Shown one piece after another: positions 15,954 to 55,319 of a stretch of 64,000 nt of DNA. The notes under the pieces were generated by a model. It saw only the letters and a list, made by a program, of their open reading frames with translations, had not been told where the DNA came from and ran no database searches. The position numbers and the translations under genes are program-made. Location of the stretch: positions 62,001 through 126,000 of the IMG/VR virus record IMGVR_UViG_3300033143_006101. One strand, given 5' to 3'. How positions within the stretch are numbered: position 1 is the first letter of the stretch; each line of letters opens with the position of its first letter.

Positions 15954-17060
15954 ATGGCACTAGAAGAAAGAATAAAAGAATTAGTTGATTATCTTCATAT
16001 TCAACGAAAGAAGTATTATGAGGGGGAGATAGAAATTTCTGATGAAGAATTTAATGCTTTAGAAGAAGAATTGAGATCTCTAGATTCTGAGAACGAATAT
16101 TTCAAAGAAGTTGGATCTGAACCGGATACGGATAAAATAAAACATTCCTTTCCTATGCGAAGTATCCAAAAAAAGAAATCCCCAGAGAAAGTAACCAGCT
16201 GGCTTAGAAGTAGAATGGGAGATGCTATAGATGTTATAATTCAACCTAAAATAGATGGTGTATCTTTAACAAACCGATATGAGGAAAGAGAGCTTATATA
16301 TAGTGCTACCCGAGGAGATGGGGAATATGGAAAAGAAATTACAGAAGTAATCCAGCTGATAGAAGAAGTTCCTAAAGCAACATATACTATGGATCCAATA
16401 GAAATAAGGGGTGAAGTATATTTAGAAAAAGATGCTGAATATTCAAAGCAAAAGGCTCAAGAAGGTAAAGAATCACTTAGAAATATAGCGGCTGGAATAC
16501 TAAATAGAAAGCAAAATATTGAGGATGCGGTGCATCTTAACTTTGTAGCATATGATATAATAGGAGTGCCCTTTCCCAGTGAATTAGATAAATTAGAATA
16601 TTTACAAGCAATAGTACCTAATCCAATAATATATCAGAGAGCCCAGAGTGTAGAAGAAGTTGCTGCATTATGGGAACAATATAATGAAGAACGAGAGATT
16701 CTCGCTTATGAAATAGACGGGATTGTTATAAAGATAAATGATGGTAAACTAAGAGAGCAATATCAAGGAACTAATCCTCATCATTGGGGATATGAAATAT
16801 CCTGGAAATTTGAAGCAAGAAAAGAGGTTACAACACTAACAGATATCATATGGACAATTGGGGCAAAAGGCAACGAATCTCCTGTAGCCATATTCGAACC
16901 AGTTAGTATTAGTGGCAGAAATATAGAAAAAGCCACGTTACATAACCAAAAAAGAATAAATGAATTACAGCTGGAAATTGGCGATATTATAGAAGTAGGC
17001 TTGGCCGGGGATGTTATACCTAAAGTATATTCTAATCTCAGCAAAAACATAACTATTTAA
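15954..17060 (+). CDS. ligA: NAD+-dependent DNA ligase, truncated after the OB domain
   Basis: Ia domain (KYY...ISDEEF), MRSIQK, QPKIDG, EIRGEV, LRNIAAG, EIDGIVIK, WKF, ATLHN, AGDVIPKV. The stop follows directly, so there is no Zn finger, HhH or BRCT. Confidence 0.92.
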   Translation: MALEERIKELVDYLHIQRKKYYEGEIEISDEEFNALEEELRSLDSENEYFKEVGSEPDTDKIKHSFPMRSIQKKKSPEKVTSWLRSRMGDAIDVIIQPKIDGVSLTNRYEERELIYSATRGDGEYGKEITEVIQLIEEVPKATYTMDPIEIRGEVYLEKDAEYSKQKAQEGKESLRNIAAGILNRKQNIEDAVHLNFVAYDIIGVPFPSELDKLEYLQAIVPNPIIYQRAQSVEEVAALWEQYNEEREILAYEIDGIVIKINDGKLREQYQGTNPHHWGYEISWKFEARKEVTTLTDIIWTIGAKGNESPVAIFEPVSISGRNIEKATLHNQKRINELQLEIGDIIEVGLAGDVIPKVYSNLSKNITI

Positions 17061-29454: not shown

Positions 29455-30553
29455 ACTCCTACTCTATAAATCCATCTTCAGGATCAGGCTTCGCACCCTT
29501 AAATATAGGCTTCCACCACTCACATGAATGCATGGGCTTAACATAACCTATACCACTATTCTTATCTACACATCTACTCTTAGCACTATAATATGAAGCA
29601 CACGTCTTACATTCCTTATCCTTCATATACATCCTCTCCTTATTAAAATTCAGCACATTGTACTCTATGTACAAGACCACGTAAACATGGTACCCACTCA
29701 TCTAACCCCGTGTCTTCTGTCCTATACATTAACTTATTATCTATACACTTCAACCTCTCGCTAGATACCTCATCACACTTGTAATTCTCTTGTGTCAATG
29801 GACGCTTAGCAGGTCTCTCCACCATCAATATCTGCAATATAATAAAACATATCAATAGTTTCAGTCTAATATCATACCTCCAATGCTCGCCTATTCCATA
29901 TACTTATATGTCTCCTACAAAAGTATCTTCCTTCATATAAGTCTTAGCTATCAATACTTGCAAATCAGTAACTGGTTTTCCATGATATATTAATGTACTA
30001 TCCTCTGTCTCTAATGTATCAACAACTTCATTATAATATTTATAAAAACGTGCGTTAGGATCTTCTTTATTTATTATCTCTATCGCTGCATCATAAGCTT
30101 CCCTTAGAGTAAGATAAGGCATCCTATCAAATTCCTTATCACCTTGAAGATTCGATATAATTACTTCATACCTTTCTCTTGACCCTCCAGCACTCCTAAT
30201 CAAACCATCTAAATTCTTAATTTTCTTAATATCCATACCACTTCTTCCAGTTATCAATAGATAAATAATATGAATTTTTTTCCATTCTTTAAGATTTTTT
30301 TCCAATAATAACCCAAAAAGCTACTAAATGTGCACTATAAAAGATAGAGACCAGGAGGCGAAATTCACCCCCTGAAATATACCAAGGAGAAGAACTATGA
30401 CCTATATCAAACAAAATAACAAAGGTAACTGGGAAACATGGGTTAATAACTACACACAAGTGACGAGATACCTACCTATATCATACATGTCTCGTCACTC
30501 ATTACGACATAACAGTCCAGTAGTACTATCCGCTGCGGGTTATGTAATTTTAT

Positions 30554-30610
30554 AAAAAATTATTAATTTTTTATAAAATTATTAATTTTTTATAAAATTA
30601 ATAATTTTTT
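30554..30610. repeat. Three tandem 19-bp units, each containing AAAATT-N3-AATTTT (operator-like)
   Basis: Units at 30554-30572, 30573-30591 and 30592-30610, ending 2 bp before the -35 hexamer. Confidence 0.75.
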
Positions 30611-30612
30611 AC

Positions 30613-30641
30613 TTGACGATCAGAATAAATTTGTATATACT
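30613..30641 (+). promoter_or_regulatory. Sigma70-type promoter of the RHH/RAMP island
   Basis: TTGACG-17-TATACT. Confidence 0.7.
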
Positions 30642-30672
30642 TATACATACAGGATAAAAAGGAAAATTACAA

Positions 30673-30834
30673 ATGAAAAAAAGATTTTATTATAATGTAG
30701 CTTGCCCCACAAAAAAAGAACGAGATAATTTAAGACAATCAGTTAAAATTCTGGCAGCAAGATTAGGGGTCAATATATGGCAAGCAATAAAAATTGCTGT
30801 AGAAACTTTTAAATATAAAAAGGAAGATAAATGA
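30673..30834 (+). CDS. Small ribbon-helix-helix-like regulator (53 aa, not in the ORF track)
   Basis: MKKRFYYNVACPTKKERDNLRQSVKILAARLGVNIWQAIKIAVETFKYKKEDK shows a strand-helix-G-helix pattern; ATGA overlap with the next gene. Confidence 0.5.
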   Translation: MKKRFYYNVACPTKKERDNLRQSVKILAARLGVNIWQAIKIAVETFKYKKEDK

Positions 30835-31475
30835 AAAATTCAAGGCAACTTAGAAAAGATTTTAAAAACGTAGGTATCCATATAAAACGATGGGAATTTA
30901 AAGAAGAAAGTACTTTTAAAAAGAGAGCAAAATCTAAAAAAATAAGTGAAAATAAATGTATTATTGAATTTTATAATTTACAAGCAGAAATACACTCAGA
31001 AACACCACGAGATATAGCTAAAGCTCTCATTAATAAATATGATAATGGTGATATTAATACTCTTCATAAATTATTAACTATGGATAAAAATAAAGGCCAT
31101 CTTACTAATTTAACAAGAGAAATATCACAAATAAATAGTGATATTGTAATGATTCCTGTATATCATATTAAATCTCCAGCAAAAGAAATAACATCTCTTA
31201 AAGTTAAACATTTAACCGTGAAACATAATACTACAAATATACAAACACATATTCCAGAGGAAATACCAAGAAATCAAAGTTTAGCAGATCTGATAATGCA
31301 ACCAGATATATTAGCATTACATTATATAAAATTTGCCAAAGGAATTATATCAAGATGTCAAAAAGGTTTAGAATTTAAAGCTATAGAATATGATGTAGAG
31401 AAAATTATTGATATATTACAAAAGATTATAAATACATATATGCCCCAAGTAGAAGAACTTAAAAATAAGCATTAA
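30831..31475 (+). CDS. Accessory protein of the RAMP-like locus (function unknown)
   Basis: 214 aa, translationally coupled to the RHH-like gene. TPRDI...LH.L..D..KG pattern recalls proteins I associate with neighbours of this phage RAMP-like family (unverified). Confidence 0.5.
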   Translation: MKNSRQLRKDFKNVGIHIKRWEFKEESTFKKRAKSKKISENKCIIEFYNLQAEIHSETPRDIAKALINKYDNGDINTLHKLLTMDKNKGHLTNLTREISQINSDIVMIPVYHIKSPAKEITSLKVKHLTVKHNTTNIQTHIPEEIPRNQSLADLIMQPDILALHYIKFAKGIISRCQKGLEFKAIEYDVEKIIDILQKIINTYMPQVEELKNKH

Positions 31476-31512
31476 GTTTAATTTTAAAATATTAGATAAA
31501 AGAGAGGACACC

Positions 31513-32295
31513 ATGACAACAAAAAAAACCAAGAAAAAGAAAAAGAAAACAGTAGTAGAAGTAGGTAAAGAATTGATGGACCAAGGAGGTCCCATTCTAG
31601 AAAACCTTGAAGAAGTCCACATAGATCCATTGGAATCTTTTTCTCTTATAGAATTTGAGTTAGGAGCTATCGGTTCTAAAGAAGTATTACAAAATAAAAT
31701 GCACGATGTACTTCTTGAAAAAAGAAGAGAAGAGTTTGAAAAGGAGGAAGATGAATAAAAAAAGGGATATGATAAAAAAAATCCGGATGTAGATTGTTTT
31801 GTAACAGCTCATTGGATTGATCCTAAAAACAAAAAAGTAGGTTTTCCAGCAATAGCTTTTAAAAAATCTTTTGTAATAGCAGCCCGTAATATTTTCGGTC
31901 CTAAAAGTAAAATGAAAACAGCTTTAGATAATGCTATTTTTGTAGTACCAACAGCAAGCCGAGGTCTTATCCCTGTAGATTATAAAAAATACAGCAATAG
32001 TATAGAACTCGGTAATCTTGGTGGACAGAAAAATAAACTATGCCCTTTCTATAGAGCAAAGTTTTCTGATTGGAACTGTAAAGTATTAGTTGTATTCGAT
32101 GAAGATGTAATCTCGTCTCGTCAATTAGTAAAAGCCGTATTAAAAGCAGGAATCTTTGGTGGTATCGGTGCATGGAGAGCAGCAAAATCAGGAACTTACG
32201 GAACCTATACAATAACAAAAATAGGCAGTCAGAGAGTAAGAGAATTGGTTAAATATACCATATCAAAAATAGATTGGGCACAATATATAATTTAA
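31513..32295 (+). pseudogene. Cas7/RAMP-like phage protein; one reading frame interrupted by a single in-frame TAA at 31756-31758
   Basis: Track ORFs 31513..31758 and 31912..32295 share a frame, which stays open after the TAA (KKGYDKKNPDVDCFVTAHWIDPKNKKVGFPAIAFKKSFVIAA). RAMP-like elements: IEFELG...LQN (beta1), GFPAxAFK helix, RAKFSDW.CKV.VVFD, and G-rich loop AGIFGGIGAWRAAKSGTYG. Confidence 0.72.
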
Positions 32296-32303
32296 CATAT
32301 AAA

Positions 32304-32570
32304 TGGATTGAACCTTAAGCGGTTTTCTTGATTCACTATCAGGCAATCCGAATTAGATAAAAGATTAGATTAGCTTAGCCAAGAATAGACCAGAGCAGAA
32401 AAGACAAGACGAGTCGGGCAGAATCTACAGCGATTATTAAGGTTCATTACCTTACTGCCCAAATTAGATAAAAGACTAGAATAGATCAGACTAGAATAGC
32501 AAAGAGCAGACTAGATTAGAACAGGAGCAGAACCTATAAGAGGTTATTGAGATTCACTATCTCACTACTC
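32304..32570 (+). ncRNA. Structured non-coding array: three tRNA-like cloverleaf units alternating with two (AGA-NN)10 tracts
   Basis: Units at 32304-32350, 32416-32460 and 32525-32570 share the same geometry with compensatory base changes. Tracts at 32351-32415 and 32461-32524 have strict 5-nt periodicity. Confidence 0.8.
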
Positions 32571-32683
32571 AAATTAAATTCCTCCTTCCCAACCCCAGCT
32601 TGCTCTTAGCTCACATGTGGACCCATAGCTACTTTTATAAGAATGTACTTGACAATTAGTACATATATATATAATAGTCATTT

Positions 32684-32878: not shown

Positions 32879-33151
32879 CCTTCACTCACCTCGTATGGTA
32901 TTTACATATCCTCAAATAAACGCTCCCACATCTCCCACTCCTCATCATCTATCTCCGGAATACCTTCAAAGAACATGTCTATTAGTAACTCCTCACAATC
33001 ATCCCAATCCAATACCTCACGCCTCCTGAAAAACTTCCTCAACCTCTCAAACATATCACTACCTCCTATCAGTCTTACTCTATATAAACGTAAAACTACC
33101 CCAAACCATGAACCAAAATAAACCCTCAACCTACCCCCAACTTGCCCCTGG

Positions 33152-33208
33152 CTCACTCCTAACTCGCGTATTACCCCCTCTCACTCCTAATTCACTCCTA
33201 ACTCGCGT
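33152..33208. repeat. Short direct repeats tcactcctaa(ctcgcgt)
   Basis: Copies start at 33153, 33181 and 33192. Confidence 0.7.
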
Positions 33209-33368
33209 GTGAACCGGTGTAATTAACTATGGATCCATAGTTACTTTATAAAATTATTAATTCTATTTCCAGCAAAAAATTAGTCTCACAGACAAGAGAG
33301 GCTGGGTACCCACCCGTCACCACCGGTGGTCAGATGTTGAAAGGGGTACATTATAGACCACCCTCAAT

Positions 33369-33473
33369 AATTGACCATCATCAAAAGTTGACCGGACTAC
33401 AATTGACCATCATCAAAAGTTGACTAGGCAATGACTGACCACACGGGATTATGTCCCCTGTCAAAAGTTGACC
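33369..33473. repeat. Iteron-like 24-bp direct repeats
   Basis: aattgaccatcatcaaaagttgac at 33369-33392 and 33401-33424; partial tcaaaagttgacc at 33461-33473. Confidence 0.8.
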
Positions 33474-33507
33474 TACTCAAATTTTTATGGAATAAAAGCC
33501 CAAAACT

Positions 33508-33751
33508 GTCAGTTTTTCGGAATTCCCAATACTCGGTGCAAGCTCGTCACAGGGATGGATGTCCTAGAGTTTGAGTCTGGTAAAGCAGTAATACCAGCAT
33601 AGACAGATATAGCTAATCATTAGACATATCTGTCTATGCTGGTGTTGGACTGAACAGATTTCCGGCTTTTGTCGGTTTTTCGGAATTTCCAATACTTGCA
33701 TCCAGTCAGTCTGGTTTGATAGATTGACTGCCTTATTGAGGATGGATGTCC
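33508..33751. repeat. Imperfect duplication bracketing a 15-bp-stem hairpin
   Basis: gtc(a/g)gtttttcggaatt(c/t)ccaatact at 33508 and 33671; ggatggatgtcc at 33553 and 33740; hairpin at 33596-33640. Confidence 0.7.
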
Positions 33752-35146: not shown

Positions 35147-36146
35147 TTAACTGCTGTTGCTTAGGCAGCTTGACTTGTCCTAAGCAACCAGGAGTTAACT
35201 AACTCAGGAGGTTAGAGATGAAAGACCAGATACTAAATGAAGTAGCATATGGTGTCGCTAAGTATGTTAAAGACAGACGAGCAGCAAGAGATCATCGTCA
35301 TCCTCTTGCCGGTTCTATTGTAGAACCTAGCCTCATTCCTCGTCGTACATATGCTCCACTCAATTCCATTGGCAACATCATCAAAGCCAAAGGACAGACC
35401 ATTGGAGTAAAGGTAGACACAGAGTAATTCCTTTAGCTTAGCTATGGGTTTAACTATGGATCCATAGCTAAGTCTAAGCACTTATTTAATAGGAGGTAAC
35501 ATGAAAACAAGAGTGTATTGTCACAAAACTCATGGATGGAAATCTGTTGACCAACTTGGGAATATCACTGATGCTCTCAATAAAAACAGGATGACTATCT
35601 CATGTAAACGGACAACTCATGTTAAGTAAAGAAGAACGTAAGAGACTACAGAATGCCATGAGGTATATCGACATGGCCAACGAGATAACAGATAATCTCG
35701 TGAAATCTGCAAGTAAAACCTACAAAGATTATGTCACCCGCAAGTAATTTAACTATGGATCCATAGATAACTATGGATCCATAGTAAAAATTAAAGGAGG
35801 TTATATGGACGGTAATTATGTCAGCATCAATCGTAGTGTAGTAACATGTAAGAAGCAGAAAGGTGAGAGAACAGCTATAGTACACAGGGGAGCATGTAAA
35901 CAGTGTCCCTTTCATCAAGACATAAGATGTCCAAACTAAATGTTATTCGATAGGATTATGACAGAACAAAACAAAAACCACAAAACAGATTATGATAGGT
36001 TAGTACGACTGTTAGAATCTATGGGAATGAGTACAGAACAAGCAAAACTCACCTCAAAAGACAGACTCAAACAATAAGGCATTATGTTATAGTTAACTGA
36101 TATCCTATAGTCAGGATATCAGCTTACTTTAAACCAGGAGGTACTT

Positions 36147-37207: not shown

Positions 37208-37302
37208 TGGGAGAAGGCTGAGCGTAGTTTCAGCCTTCTCCCATAACACCGGACTACACTTGAGTAACACCGGACTACACTTGAGTAACACCGGACTACA
37301 CT
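37208..37302. repeat. 14-bp-stem hairpin followed by 21-bp tandem repeats
   Basis: tgggagaaggctga/tcagccttctccca, then taacaccggactacacttgag at 37244 and 37265 and a partial copy at 37286. Confidence 0.85.
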
Positions 37303-54098: not shown

Positions 54099-55319
54099 AT
54101 GCAAGAAATTTACATGGAAAAAACTAGCGAGACTGGTGCAAAACTATTCTATGAGTATAAGATAGAAGAAAGCACTGTAAAATTTCGCTGGGGGCAGATT
54201 GGCAGTGACAACATTCAGTCTGATGAACGAACCTTTACAGAAGGTAAGAACATTGGTAAGAAGAATGAGAAGAGTCCGGAACAATGTTGTATAGAAGATA
54301 CGGCGAGAAGGGCTCGGAAGAAACATGAGCAGGGTTATGAAATTATCAAGGGTGAAGGATTTGTTATAGCTAACACAGGTAAAACTGTAAAGGCTACAGA
54401 TCTGAGTGTACCTAAACCCATGAAAGCTCAGACTCTTAAAGACCATTGGAAGAAAATGGATGGAGTTGACGAAGTATACTTCCAACCTAAGCTCGATGGT
54501 AATCGTGGTCTAATCAATATACGAACTGGAAAGATGTATTCCAGTGGTAGAAAAGAGATGACACATTTGCCTGAGATAGTTGAACAAGTAGTAAAAGCTT
54601 GTGAGCCTATCAAAGATGAAGTTGAATGGGTAGACGGTGAATTGTATTCACCCAAGCTTGTATTCAATGACCTTCAGTCTGTACTCAGTACATGGAAGAA
54701 CACTGAGAAAGAAGGACTTGCAGAATTACGGAAAGAAGTAAAGTTCTATTTGTTTGATGTCATATCAGACAAGCCTTTTAGTGAAAGGTTAGAGTTTATT
54801 AAAAAGCTCGAGTCAAATGATAAACTACAAATAGTAAAGACTATTGTAGGTCATCCACACGAAGCAATAGGTAGTCAGGATGACTTCATAGAACTACCTG
54901 AAGGAGTTGTTAGTCTTCATGATGTATTCATTGAAGAAGGTTATGAAGGTATTATGATTCGTACTGTCAAAACTTTAGTACGGAAGGACTGGGTAGATAA
55001 ACCATACGAATCCAAACGCTCTATGCAAATCTTCAAACACAAACTGTTTGATGATGAAGAGTTTGAAGTTATTGGTTTTGAGCCCGAAGAACATGACCCT
55101 ACAAAATTAGGGGCAGGAGTATTGAGGATGAAGAATGATGACACATTCCCTGCCAGACCTGCAATGACTGACGATTATAAAGCAGAGATATGGGCTAATC
55201 AAGATAAGTTTATTGGTCGATTAGCTACTATAAAATTTCAAGGTAAGTTTGCAGACACAGGCAAACCGAGGTTCCCCAGGTTAACCAAGTTCAGATTACC
55301 TGAGGATATTACTGAATAG
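54099..55319 (+). CDS. lig: ATP-dependent DNA ligase with N-terminal WGR-like domain
   Basis: RWGQIG and KKxEQGY (WGR-like); QPKLDGNR, DGELY, FYLFDV, EGYEGIMIR, KRS..IFKHK, KPRFP. Confidence 0.92.
   Translation: MQEIYMEKTSETGAKLFYEYKIEESTVKFRWGQIGSDNIQSDERTFTEGKNIGKKNEKSPEQCCIEDTARRARKKHEQGYEIIKGEGFVIANTGKTVKATDLSVPKPMKAQTLKDHWKKMDGVDEVYFQPKLDGNRGLINIRTGKMYSSGRKEMTHLPEIVEQVVKACEPIKDEVEWVDGELYSPKLVFNDLQSVLSTWKNTEKEGLAELRKEVKFYLFDVISDKPFSERLEFIKKLESNDKLQIVKTIVGHPHEAIGSQDDFIELPEGVVSLHDVFIEEGYEGIMIRTVKTLVRKDWVDKPYESKRSMQIFKHKLFDDEEFEVIGFEPEEHDPTKLGAGVLRMKNDDTFPARPAMTDDYKAEIWANQDKFIGRLATIKFQGKFADTGKPRFPRLTKFRLPEDITE

What the first reader, a model, noticed from the sequence alone, without database searches (positions are those of the whole stretch)
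30613..32570. Candidate phage RNA-guided system: Cas7/RAMP-like gene plus a non-CRISPR pentamer-repeat RNA array
Seen: a + strand island inside a - strand block, laid out as promoter, RHH-like gene, 214-aa gene, 260-codon RAMP-like gene, and 9 nt later a 267-nt structured array. The protein has RAMP-type features (N-terminal beta strand, GFPAxAFK helix, W.C.V.V.FD strand, C-terminal G-rich loop GIFGGIGAWR...GTYG). No Cas1/2, Cas6 or CRISPR repeats are present in the window. Known: Cas7-type RAMPs polymerise along guide RNA with a fixed per-subunit periodicity. I also recall a recent report of phage RAMP ('VIPR') systems with GGY-NN repeat RNAs, which I cannot verify here. Inference: this is a related or new subtype using AGA instead of GGY, with tRNA-like processing elements, possibly acting against competing phages or host genes.
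Basis: partly seen in the sequence, partly recalled or inferred. Interest (0 to 1): 0.96.

Follow-up and report, generated by a model that had tools for sequence, protein, structure and literature searches.

The report
Phage VIPR locus, AGA-type, broken vipr
This is a phage-borne VIPR system, an RNA-guided DNA-silencing system related to CRISPR that was first described in 2026; its guide RNAs use AGA-NN pentamers instead of the usual GGY-NN, and its protein gene is cut short by a stop codon, so it is a real but only moderately new find.

Summary
On the + strand lie a promoter-like site, a 53-codon ORF, a 214-codon gene and a 260-codon RAMP gene with an in-frame TAA. Nine nt later comes a 267-nt structured RNA region.

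The recalled "VIPR" systems exist (bioRxiv 10.64898/2026.04.26.720920 and .720927). The protein is a Vipr homologue. Its best PDB sequence match is "SUSP1 Vipr protein". A profile of 79 relatives scores it at E=1e-35. An intact 55%-identical homologue models as a Cas7-like RAMP fold.

The RNA region holds two vrRNAs of 11-12 pentamers each. G is invariant, the flanking A's are near-fixed and two positions are hypervariable. Each vrRNA ends in a 45-nt three-way-junction tail with strong covariation.

The fixed trinucleotide is AGA, not GGY. The G-loop Asp that reads G1 in SUSP1 is Ala here. In 10 loci, Asp/Glu went with G and Ala/Ser with non-G, though few of these contrasts are independent.

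vipr is interrupted by a real nonsense codon, identical in two assemblies, and TAA is the genome's main stop. The locus is therefore probably VIPR-null with intact guides.

No targets were found, and the tRNA-like processing idea is unsupported. Non-canonical VIPR repeats and vipr-null phages with solo vrRNAs are already reported. This is a new variant of a known kind.

The parts
30540..30611 (.). 19-nt tandem repeat (3.7 copies, TTATTAATTTTTTATAAAA) abutting the -35 hexamer. It may be an operator or UP element; whether it belongs to the system is uncertain.
   Evidence: TRF score 114, 92% matches. No function was tested.
30613..30641 (+). Sigma-70-like promoter TTGACG-17-TATACT for the + strand operon.
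   Evidence: It is the best of the promoter-like sites in the region, with 10 of 12 matches. This is a consensus match only. The number of such sites in the region is not above the shuffled expectation.
30673..30834 (+). 53-aa ORF, possibly a small regulator. The 'RHH-like' label is unverified. It has no counterpart in the homologous locus L001.
   Evidence: ORF. No Pfam, PHROG or PADLOC hit. The only PDB hits are designed helical repeat proteins. No equivalent ORF in L001 5171-5348.
30831..31475 (+). 214-aa conserved accessory gene directly upstream of vipr. It is a candidate vap (vipr-accessory protein) of unknown fold.
   Evidence: 42% identical over 207 aa to the gene directly upstream of vipr in L001 (E=2e-58). 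It is not detectably related to the ~170-aa accessory family found next to vipr in 9 other loci or to SUSP1 vap1. The AF2 model is unusable (pLDDT 42).
31513..31758 (+). vipr, 5' piece: 81 codons ending in the in-frame TAA (31756-31758). It comprises a Lys-rich N-terminal tail, strand beta1 and the first helix of the helical bundle.
   Evidence: 42% identical to residues 3-71 of the intact homologue P0002 (E=8e-12). The family profile starts 57 positions before the C piece. The TAA is identical in a second assembly.
31759..32295 (+). vipr, 3' piece: 178 codons plus stop. It comprises RRM helix-1 (GFPAIAFKK), the thumb (FYR) and the G-loop (AGIFGGIGAWR). There is no in-frame ATG, GTG or TTG before 31912.
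   Evidence: PDB 36pp_D SUSP1 Vipr, E=8e-4. PHROG 4652, E=2e-10. Profile of 79 homologues, E=1.4e-35 over profile positions 58-201 of 205. 55% identical to P0002, whose model matches Cmr4, Csm3 and type VII Cas7.
32305..32349 (+). Tail-like three-way-junction element with no repeat tract before it. It probably defines the 5' boundary of vrRNA1.
   Evidence: It folds to the same Y shape as the two tails (-12.8 kcal/mol, z=-3.3) and is part of the covariation alignment A6.
32350..32460 (+). vrRNA1. Conserved leader (G)AATTAGAT. 12 pentamer units at 32359-32418 with NN = AA TT TT TT CA AT CC GC AA CA CG CG. 45-nt tail at 32416-32460.
   Evidence: Periodicity. Tail fold -16.4 kcal/mol, z=-4.6. Covariation.
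32461..32570 (+). vrRNA2. Leader AAATTAGAT. 11 pentamer units at 32470-32524 with NN = AA CT AT TC CT AT AA GC CT TT AC. 46-nt tail at 32525-32570 with one C-A mismatch in the outer stem. A degenerate leader (AAATTAAAT) follows with no further array.

Best explanation
The region is a VIPR (Viral Interference Programmable Repeat) locus in a ~253-kb phage genome. It comprises a conserved accessory gene, the RAMP gene vipr, and two vrRNAs transcribed with it from one promoter.

Mechanism, by homology to the SUSP1 system. Vipr protomers polymerise one per pentamer along the vrRNA. Each pair of neighbouring protomers buries the fixed trinucleotide, here A1-G2-A3 instead of G1-G2-Y3. This presents the two variable bases. 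The 11-12 NN dinucleotides together read double-stranded DNA with one target base skipped per unit (target xNN), and binding silences transcription of a competing mobile element. The 45-nt three-way-junction tail caps the 3' end of each guide, and a copy of it upstream of vrRNA1 sets the processing boundary.

The change of the fixed base G1 to A goes with replacement of the G-loop Asp that hydrogen-bonds G1 in SUSP1 by Ala. The residues that hold the invariant G2 (thumb Arg, G-loop Trp) are kept.

In this particular phage, vipr carries a genuine premature TAA after codon 81, inside the RAMP domain. The phage itself therefore most likely makes no functional Vipr. The guides are either recent relics or are used with Vipr supplied in trans.

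Shown: homology, fold of the intact homologue, repeat architecture, tail structure, the nonsense codon.

Inferred: RNP formation, the 1-nt-skip DNA reading, silencing, the target class, processing.
For: Literature:
- VIPR and its mechanism are described in bioRxiv 10.64898/2026.04.26.720920 and 10.64898/2026.04.26.720927.

Protein:
- The best PDB sequence hit of the C piece is 'SUSP1 Vipr protein' 36pp_D (E=8e-4). The intact homologue P0002 hits it at E=1e-6.
- A profile of 79 relatives scores the C piece at E=1.4e-35 and SUSP1 Vipr at E=3.5e-18.
- phmmer against 1.8 billion representatives finds 1443 relatives, mostly ~200 aa.
- The AF2 model of P0002 has pLDDT 87.8. Its Foldseek top hits are Cmr4, Csm3 and type VII Cas7 (E=3e-7).

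RNA:
- 'AG' is in phase 11 of 11 times at the two arrays only.
- There are three constrained and two hypervariable positions per unit.
- The same leader, repeat type and tail occur in four vrRNAs after the homologous gene in L001, ending in an intrinsic terminator.
- In the tail, 99% of cells pair, 11 of 16 pairs show compensatory changes, and slid controls give 24-48%. Two G-U pairs fit only the + strand.

Specificity residues:
- SUSP1 R138, W178 and R179 are conserved, D177 is Ala and H17 is Asn.
- Across 10 loci, Asp/Glu before the Trp goes with G at position 1 (69-80%). Ala/Ser goes with A or N.

Nonsense codon:
- It is identical in contigs from two samples (0 mismatches in 4108 nt).
- TAA ends 33 of 45 long ORFs, and no other gene is split by it.
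- The homologue is colinear and uninterrupted.

Phage context:
- PHROG hits are present, and the homologue lies on an IMG/VR contig of 217.7 kb.
Against: - No transcription, RNP or binding data exist for this clade.
- No natural target was found. There was no match above chance in the window or in L001. Central 10-unit patterns gave no exact hit in IMG/VR. The 9-unit seeds gave only chance-level hits in metagenomes and genomes, with no convincing extension.
- The 1-nt-skip rule is therefore untested for AGA-type guides.
- The window's N-terminal piece does not score against the family profile on its own.
- The accessory gene has no detectable relation to published-type vaps.
- The Asp-to-Ala versus G-to-A correlation rests on only 1-3 phylogenetically independent contrasts.
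- Position 3 is a purine here, whereas the SUSP1 pocket is said to exclude purines. The pocket must differ in ways I could not map reliably.
Confidence: 0.85

Rival explanations
1. Free-rider ('guns for hire') reading. vipr is dead, but the two vrRNAs are maintained by selection. They load onto AGA-type Vipr made by a co-infecting or resident relative, redirecting that machinery to this phage's advantage. This mirrors the reported vipr-null SUSP1-like phages and satellites that keep solo vrRNAs.
For: - vipr carries a nonsense codon, while both arrays keep G at position 2 in 23 of 23 units and A at position 1 in 22 of 23.
- All three tail elements still fold, with compensatory changes.
- Solo vrRNAs in vipr-null phages and satellites are documented in 10.64898/2026.10.15.759431.
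Against: - Here the gene is hit by a point nonsense codon, not deleted, which fits very recent inactivation equally well.
- No target was found in the relative's VIPR locus (best 16/24 and 15/22 under the 1-nt-skip rule).
- Only one related phage lineage is known, so no partner has been identified.
Confidence: 0.25
2. The system is fully functional in this phage. Either the TAA is read through or suppressed, or a C-terminal product is made by another route. One such route is initiation at the out-of-frame ATG 31769 followed by a -1 slip on the A_AAA_AAA run at 31774-31780, giving a split Vipr. A consensus error shared by both assemblies is a further possibility.
For: - The frame is perfectly colinear across the stop.
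- The rest of the gene keeps all family-conserved residues.
- The arrays are intact.
- A slippery heptamer follows the stop (sequence read).
Against: - TAA is the dominant genuine stop codon (33 of 45 long ORFs), and no other gene is interrupted by it.
- There are no tRNA genes in the window.
- The same codon is present in two assemblies.
- The ATG has only a poorly spaced Shine-Dalgarno-like sequence.
- The homologue needs no such device.
Confidence: 0.12
3. Not a guide system. The periodic AG RNA would be a protein sponge or attenuator for a ring or filament RNA-binding protein, as TRAP binds (G/U)AG repeats spaced by 2-3 nt. Or it would be a degenerate CRISPR-like remnant.
For: NAG triplets every 5 nt, 11-12 times, superficially resemble TRAP binding sites (sequence; the TRAP comparison is from my own knowledge).
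Against: - The adjacent protein is a Vipr homologue with a Cas7-like fold, not a TRAP-like protein.
- Two positions per unit are hypervariable between paralogous and orthologous arrays.
- No CRISPR repeats or cas genes are at the locus.
Confidence: 0.03

Closest known systems
Type II VIPR of Escherichia phage SUSP1 (Vipr + vap1 + vrRNAs; bioRxiv 10.64898/2026.04.26.720920 and .720927; PDB 36pp)
   Same: - The Vipr protein is homologous, and the thumb Arg, G-loop Trp and G-loop Arg are conserved.
- The guides have ~12 pentamers with three fixed and two hypervariable bases, followed by a conserved structured 3' tail.
- Several vrRNAs lie in tandem next to the gene.
- The system is phage-encoded and has no CRISPR array.
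   Different: - The fixed trinucleotide is AGA rather than GGY (GGT in SUSP1-type phages).
- The G-loop Asp177 is Ala and His17 is Asn.
- The tail is a three-way junction rather than a pseudoknot.
- The accessory gene lies upstream and is unrelated in sequence to vap1.
- The protein has a ~35-residue Lys-rich N-terminal extension.
- The host genome is a ~253-kb AT-rich phage.
- vipr is interrupted by a stop codon.
Non-canonical VIPR arrays (NNNGG, YNNNG, NNNNG in 10.64898/2026.04.26.720920; GAC/NN, CAC/NN, WGT/NN, TGH/NN clusters in 10.64898/2026.10.21.760802)
   Same: - The period is 5 with about 10 or more units.
- A Vipr-like fold lies next to the array.
- G2 is kept while positions 1 and/or 3 depart from G/Y. 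L001's WGA/NN is close to the reported WGT/NN.
   Different: - AGA/NN is not named in the text of either preprint. Their figures and tables were not available to me, so I cannot tell whether this clade is in their sets.
- Adenine is strongly preferred at position 3 (75-83%). In the other loci I sampled, position 3 is mostly C or T.
VIPR-null phages and satellites with solo vrRNAs (10.64898/2026.10.15.759431)
   Same: Guide RNAs are retained in an element that cannot make its own Vipr.
   Different: - There, vipr-vap1 is deleted (a 1,114-bp deletion). Here vipr is present but carries a nonsense codon, and the accessory gene is intact.
- Trans use is untested here.
Class 1 CRISPR backbone RAMPs (Cas7 family: Csm3, Cmr4, type VII Cas7)
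   Same: RRM core, thumb and G-rich loop. These are the best structural matches of the homologue's model (E=3e-7 to 1e-5, TM 0.4-0.57). They also form a filament of one subunit per fixed step along a guide RNA.
   Different: - The step is 5 nt, not 6 nt.
- There is no CRISPR repeat-spacer array and there are no Cas1, Cas2, Cas6 or large/small subunit genes.
- The guide is read discontinuously.
- Sequence identity is only 9-13%.

Membership tests
VIPR system | Vipr protein: sequence homology to characterised Vipr (SUSP1) | tested here: met
   PDB phmmer: C piece vs 36pp_D, E=8e-4; intact homologue P0002, E=1e-6. A profile of 79 relatives scores both the window C piece (1.4e-35) and SUSP1 Vipr (3.5e-18).
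VIPR system | Minimal RAMP fold: single RRM core, thumb and glycine-rich loop | tested here: met
   Tested on the intact 55%-identical homologue, since the window gene cannot be read through. AF2 pLDDT 87.8. Foldseek top hits are Cmr4, Csm3 and type VII Cas7 at probability 1.0. The G-loop AGIFGGIGAWR and the thumb FYR are present in the window sequence.
VIPR system | Uninterrupted vipr reading frame (needed for an autonomous system) | tested here: not met
   In-frame TAA at 31756-31758, after codon 81 and before profile position 58 of 205. Identical in two assemblies. No sign of TAA recoding.
VIPR system | vrRNA: at least 4 tandem pentamers with a fixed trinucleotide alternating with a hypervariable dinucleotide | tested here: met
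   12 and 11 units. G is 23/23, flanking A is 22/23 and 19/23, and NN carries 0.16-0.19 bits. The signal is unique in 64 kb. It is conserved after the homologous gene in L001, with 66 units in 4 arrays.
VIPR system | Canonical GGY fixed trinucleotide | tested here: not met
   The trinucleotide is AGA in the window and WGA in L001. The defining papers accept 'a related consensus', so this excludes the canonical type, not the family.
VIPR system | Invariable structured 3' tail capping each repeat tract | tested here: met
   A 45-47-nt three-way junction follows each tract. 99% of cells pair and 11 of 16 pairs are compensatory. The architecture differs from the SUSP1 pseudoknot.
VIPR system | Adjacent vap accessory gene | tested here: inconclusive
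   A 214-aa gene is conserved next to vipr in both members of the clade. It shows no detectable similarity to SUSP1 vap1 or to the ~170-aa family beside vipr in 9 other loci, and no usable model was obtained.
VIPR system | Viral or proviral context without a CRISPR array or cas genes | tested here: met
   Phage-type genes are present. The homologue lies on an IMG/VR contig. There are no CRISPR-like repeats in the window and no PADLOC hit for the locus proteins. The other window ORFs were not scanned for cas genes.
VIPR system | vrRNA expression, co-purification with Vipr, and dsDNA recognition by the 1-nt-skip rule | not testable with these tools
   Only indirect target searches were possible. 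None gave a match above chance.
Class 1 CRISPR-Cas (Cas7 backbone) | CRISPR repeat-spacer array and companion cas genes (Cas5/Cas6, large subunit, Cas1-Cas2) | tested here: not met
   No direct-repeat array with CRISPR-like periods. The locus proteins have no Pfam, PADLOC or NCBI-type cas hits. The only resemblance is at fold level.
   ARAGORN finds none in the window. Rfam finds no tRNA-clan hit in 32250-32650 even at E<=10. The hairpin B loop UUCAUUA/UUCACUA lacks the conserved A at T-loop position 58 (sequence; T-loop rule from my own knowledge).

The most novel reading that the evidence does not exclude
The identity of the fixed trinucleotide may be set by a simple protein code: an acidic residue before the G-loop Trp reads G1, while Ala/Ser gives A or any base. 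AGA-type Vipr-vrRNA pairs would then be orthogonal to GGY-type pairs, a diversification driven by guide hijacking among phages. On this reading, the present jumbo phage, with a nonsense-killed vipr but pristine AGA guides and tails, is a free-rider that loads its guides onto the Vipr of related AGA-type phages.
Probability: 0.2. Interest if true: 0.65.

Novelty: new variant of a known kind. Interest (0 to 1): 0.42.

Why it matters
VIPR was described only in 2026 and is proposed as the ancestor of CRISPR backbone proteins and as a programmable DNA-silencing tool. Four things make a clade with AGA fixed bases useful.

1. It offers a natural experiment on how Vipr reads its fixed bases. The clade has a matching Asp-to-Ala change at the residue that contacts G1, a different (three-way-junction) tail and a different accessory gene.
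2. It is a candidate for an orthogonal second channel beside GGY systems.
3. It is another example, by a different genetic route, of a phage that keeps guides while losing the effector.
4. It places VIPR in a ~250-kb phage.

The find does not change the picture of what VIPR is.

Tried and rejected
- **Rfam.** The whole window at gathering threshold gave no hit. The array region at E<=10 gave only a sub-threshold plant miRNA model, which is a chance match.
- **tRNA/tmRNA scan.** None found.
- **DNA similarity of the locus to GenBank phages.** None.
- **Pfam, PADLOC.** No hits for any locus protein. PHROGs gave one family of unknown function for the C piece.
- **Related loci.** The search for related loci with the 80-sequence alignment failed because there was no conserved stretch. 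P0003 was not found in IMG/VR.
- **TAA recoding.** Rejected. The other same-frame ORF pairs separated by TAA are ordinary gene boundaries with start codons, and TAA is the main stop.
- **Second vipr copy in the window.** None.
- **Targets under skip rules 0-3 in the window and in the relative's locus.** Nothing above unit-order shuffles.
- **Targets in public collections.** Exact 10-unit patterns in IMG/VR gave nothing. 9-unit seeds gave 38 metagenome hits and 12 genome hits. These hits have mixed GC content and extend to at most 22/24 and 20/22. I judged these numbers to be about what chance would give; that is my own estimate from pattern and collection size.
- **Accessory gene.** The homologue search found only itself. 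hhalign against the common vap family gave 1% probability. The AF2 model had pLDDT 42, so no fold search was run.
- **53-aa ORF as RHH.** No support.
- **G-loop code by independent contrasts.** Only 1-3 contrasts exist among the 10 loci, so significance cannot be reached.
- **Y3-pocket residues (SUSP1 E71/M72).** I did not map them, because the alignment at ~20% identity is unreliable there.
Full report
**What is there**

The + strand between 30613 and 32570 holds these features in order:
- A promoter-like site, TTGACG-17-TATACT, at 30613-30641.
- A 53-codon ORF at 30673-30834.
- A 214-codon gene at 30831-31475.
- An 81-codon ORF at 31513-31758 that ends in TAA. The same frame continues for 178 further codons to 32295.
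- Nine nucleotides later, 267 nt of structured RNA-like sequence.

A single tblastn alignment of an intact homologue crosses the stop (49.6% identity over 244 aa, E=1.5e-60). The two ORFs are therefore one gene broken by one nonsense codon.

The 5-nt periodicity is not chance. 'AG' is in phase 11 of 11 times in 55-nt windows at 32339-32436 and 32450-32547 only. Nowhere else in the 64 kb does either strand exceed 7.

**The recalled system exists**

The library holds four 2026 preprints on VIPR.
- The founding paper (10.64898/2026.04.26.720920) describes a minimal RAMP protein, Vipr, usually with one accessory gene (vap), mostly in phages. It also describes ~100-nt vrRNAs made of 9-16 YNNGG units followed by a conserved tail. 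The NN dinucleotides read double-stranded DNA with one base skipped per unit. Seven types are defined, some with 'a related consensus' (NNNGG, YNNNG, NNNNG).
- The structural paper (10.64898/2026.04.26.720927) shows one protomer per pentamer. G1 is read by H17 and D177. G2 is held by R138 and W178. Y3 sits in a pocket that excludes purines.

**The protein is a Vipr**

- By sequence alone, the best PDB match of the C-terminal piece is 'SUSP1 Vipr protein' (36pp_D, E=8e-4).
- The closest relative in 5.8 billion proteins is P0002. It is 247 aa and uninterrupted, 55% identical to the C piece and 42% identical to the N piece. P0002 hits the SUSP1 Vipr chain at E=1e-6.
- An exhaustive phmmer search with P0002 finds 1443 relatives at E<=1e-3, mostly about 200 aa.
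- A profile built from 79 of them, without P0002, scores the window's C piece at E=1.4e-35 and SUSP1 Vipr at E=3.5e-18.
- The AlphaFold model of P0002 is confident (pLDDT 87.8). Its best solved-structure matches are the Cas7-family backbone subunits Cmr4, Csm3 and type VII Cas7 (E=3e-7 and up, probability 1.0). Among viral models it matches uncharacterised phage proteins, including one annotated as a RAMP.

**The RNA is a pair of vrRNAs**

The 267 nt consist of:
- a tail-like element (32305-32349);
- vrRNA1, with leader AATTAGAT, 12 pentamers at 32359-32418 and a tail at 32416-32460;
- vrRNA2, with the same leader, 11 pentamers at 32470-32524 and a tail at 32525-32570.

Written in the VIPR register, the unit is A1-G2-A3-N4-N5.

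| Position | Window, 23 units | L001, 66 units |
|---|---|---|
| G2 | G in 23 | G in 66 |
| Position 1 | A in 22 | A in 51, T in 14 |
| Position 3 | A in 19 | A in 50 |
| N4, N5 | 0.16 and 0.19 bits | 0.08 bits each |

L001 is the homologous locus. Its gene is followed by four arrays of 15-19 units with the same leader and the same kind of tail, closed by an intrinsic terminator. Two of these four guides are paralogues that differ mainly at N4 and position 3.

It is also passed for eight more distant Vipr loci that I examined.

**The tail is a real structure**

All six tails fold to the same Y shape: a 6-bp outer stem, a 4-6-bp hairpin, a 2-nt linker and a 6-bp hairpin with loop UCAYU. On their alignment:
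- 99% of cells are standard pairs;
- 11 of 16 pairs show changes on both sides;
- no shuffle reaches the observed covariation;
- sliding the partners drops pairing to 24-48%.

Two G-U pairs would be A-C mismatches on the other strand. This fits transcription of the + strand.

The tail is not tRNA-like by any test available. Nothing here speaks to how the precursor is cut.

**Why AGA instead of GGY**

In the alignment with SUSP1 Vipr:
- the residues that hold G2 are conserved (thumb Arg in FYR, G-loop Trp and Arg in GAWR);
- the Asp that hydrogen-bonds G1 is Ala;
- His17 is Asn, which is the family consensus.

Among the 80 nearest relatives, the residue before the Trp is D (21), E (20), A (19) or S (15). 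I collected arrays from loci of both classes.

| Residue before the G-loop Trp | Locus | Repeat unit |
|---|---|---|
| Asp/Glu | SUSP1-like Shigella phage | GGT/NN, G1 80% |
| Asp/Glu | Gordonia phage Ecliptus | GGC/NN, 79% |
| Asp/Glu | P0153 | GGC/NN, 69% |
| Asp/Glu | P0004 | GGC/A, 80% |
| Ala/Ser | window | AGA |
| Ala/Ser | L001 | WGA |
| Ala/Ser | P0055 | AGC |
| Ala/Ser | P0038 | AGC |
| Ala/Ser | P0007 | NGC |
| Ala/Ser | P0079 | NGC |

Ten of ten loci agree with the structural contact. However, the ten loci contain only one to three independent transitions. This is a lead, not a demonstrated rule.

On a 156-row tree the residue class changes at least 23 times, so a proper test is feasible with more loci. 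Adenine at position 3 is peculiar to the window clade. Position 3 is mostly C or T in the other eight loci.

**The gene is broken**

- The TAA falls in the Lys/Glu-rich linker of the helical bundle. That is before profile position 58 of 205, so the downstream piece lacks strand beta1 and the first bundle helix.
- The first in-frame start after it is at 31912, beyond RNA-binding helix-1.
- The codon is identical in contigs from two JGI samples, with 0 differences in 4108 nt.
- TAA ends 33 of 45 long ORFs, and no other gene is split by it.
- The homologue has a sense codon there.

I conclude that this phage carries a null or nearly null vipr allele beside intact guides. Vipr-null phages and satellites that retain 'solo' vrRNAs and exploit other elements' Vipr have been reported (10.64898/2026.10.15.759431). 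The same could apply here, but recent inactivation explains the data equally well.

**Targets**

Using the published rule (replace the fixed trinucleotide by one wildcard), neither guide matches the window or the relative's locus above unit-order shuffles. Exact 10-unit patterns are absent from IMG/VR. Nine-unit seeds returned 38 metagenome hits and 12 genome hits with mixed GC content and no convincing extension. By my own estimate from pattern and collection size, those numbers are about what chance would give.

**Neighbours**

The 214-aa gene is conserved directly upstream of vipr in both clade members (42% identity). It is unrelated by BLAST or hhalign to SUSP1 vap1. It is also unrelated to a ~170-aa family (motif SPLHxxFEWDD) that I found beside vipr in nine other loci, including Ecliptus gp20. 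Its model is unusable. The 53-aa ORF is not conserved in L001, and the RHH label is unsupported.

**Novelty**

This is a VIPR locus, and VIPR is already described. Also already in the preprints are:
- non-canonical fixed trinucleotides (GAC, CAC, WGT, TGH; 10.64898/2026.10.21.760802);
- degenerate consensuses;
- vipr-null guide carriers.

AGA/NN is not named in their text. I could not see their figures or tables. What is distinct here:
- the A-G-A unit with a purine at position 3;
- the matching G-loop substitution;
- a three-way-junction tail;
- an unrelated upstream accessory gene;
- a Lys-rich N-terminal extension;
- the jumbo-phage host genome;
- inactivation by a nonsense codon.

I rate it a new variant of a known kind, with moderate interest.

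Noticed in passing
window 30540-30611: A 19-nt tandem repeat (TTATTAATTTTTTATAAAA, 3.7 copies, 92% matches) ends exactly at the -35 hexamer of the locus promoter. It may be an operator or UP element for the VIPR operon.
   Followed up: partly
window 33150-33700, 35750-35784, 37244-37302: A low-coding, compositionally distinct stretch lies downstream of the locus. It has a 32-nt tandem repeat (33365-33441) carrying four copies of TCATCAAAAGTTGACC. The palindrome TAACTATGGATCCATAGTTA at about 33226-33245 recurs at 35750-35784. A perfect 21-nt repeat (2.8 copies) lies at 37244-37302. Few ORFs over 90 aa occur between 32.3 and 40.9 kb.
   Followed up: no
L011 1770-1900 (same in L012): In the locus of P0003, the closest outgroup of the window clade (G-loop GSW), the AG-periodic run lies on the strand opposite to vipr-vap. 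It sits between the vap stop and a bidirectional terminator. Its orientation and expression are unexplained.
   Followed up: partly
L006 3287-3709, L008 3600-4190, L009 1038-1595, L011 1254-1766, L014 1937-2476, L015 2922-3407, L016 3132-3632, L018 3283-3792, L019 1995-2501: A ~170-aa protein family with an SPLHxxFEWDD motif sits next to vipr in nine otherwise diverse loci, including Gordonia phage Ecliptus gp20. It has no Pfam match. It is absent from the window clade, which has an unrelated 214-aa gene instead.
   Followed up: partly
window 31756-31792: Just after the premature TAA there is an out-of-frame ATG (31769) followed by an A8 run (31774-31781). This forms an A_AAA_AAA slippery heptamer, and a -1 slip on it would re-enter the vipr frame. 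This is speculative: the Shine-Dalgarno spacing is poor.
   Followed up: no
window 15954-17060 and 54099-55319: The window encodes two DNA ligases of different types: NAD-dependent (PHROG 3869, E=3e-83) and ATP-dependent (PHROG 114, E=2e-52).
   Followed up: no
L018 3694-4374 (minus strand gene call): A 226-aa gene called in the public record is entirely covered by about 600 nt of GGC/NN pentamer arrays on the + strand. It is probably a spurious ORF over vrRNAs.
   Followed up: no
alignment A1 (80 Vipr relatives): The residue two positions before the thumb Arg tends to be Arg (RYR/RFR) when the G-loop residue before Trp is Asp/Glu. It tends to be hydrophobic (FYR, IYR, VYR) when that residue is Ala/Ser. 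This hints at a second position that co-varies with the fixed base.
   Followed up: no
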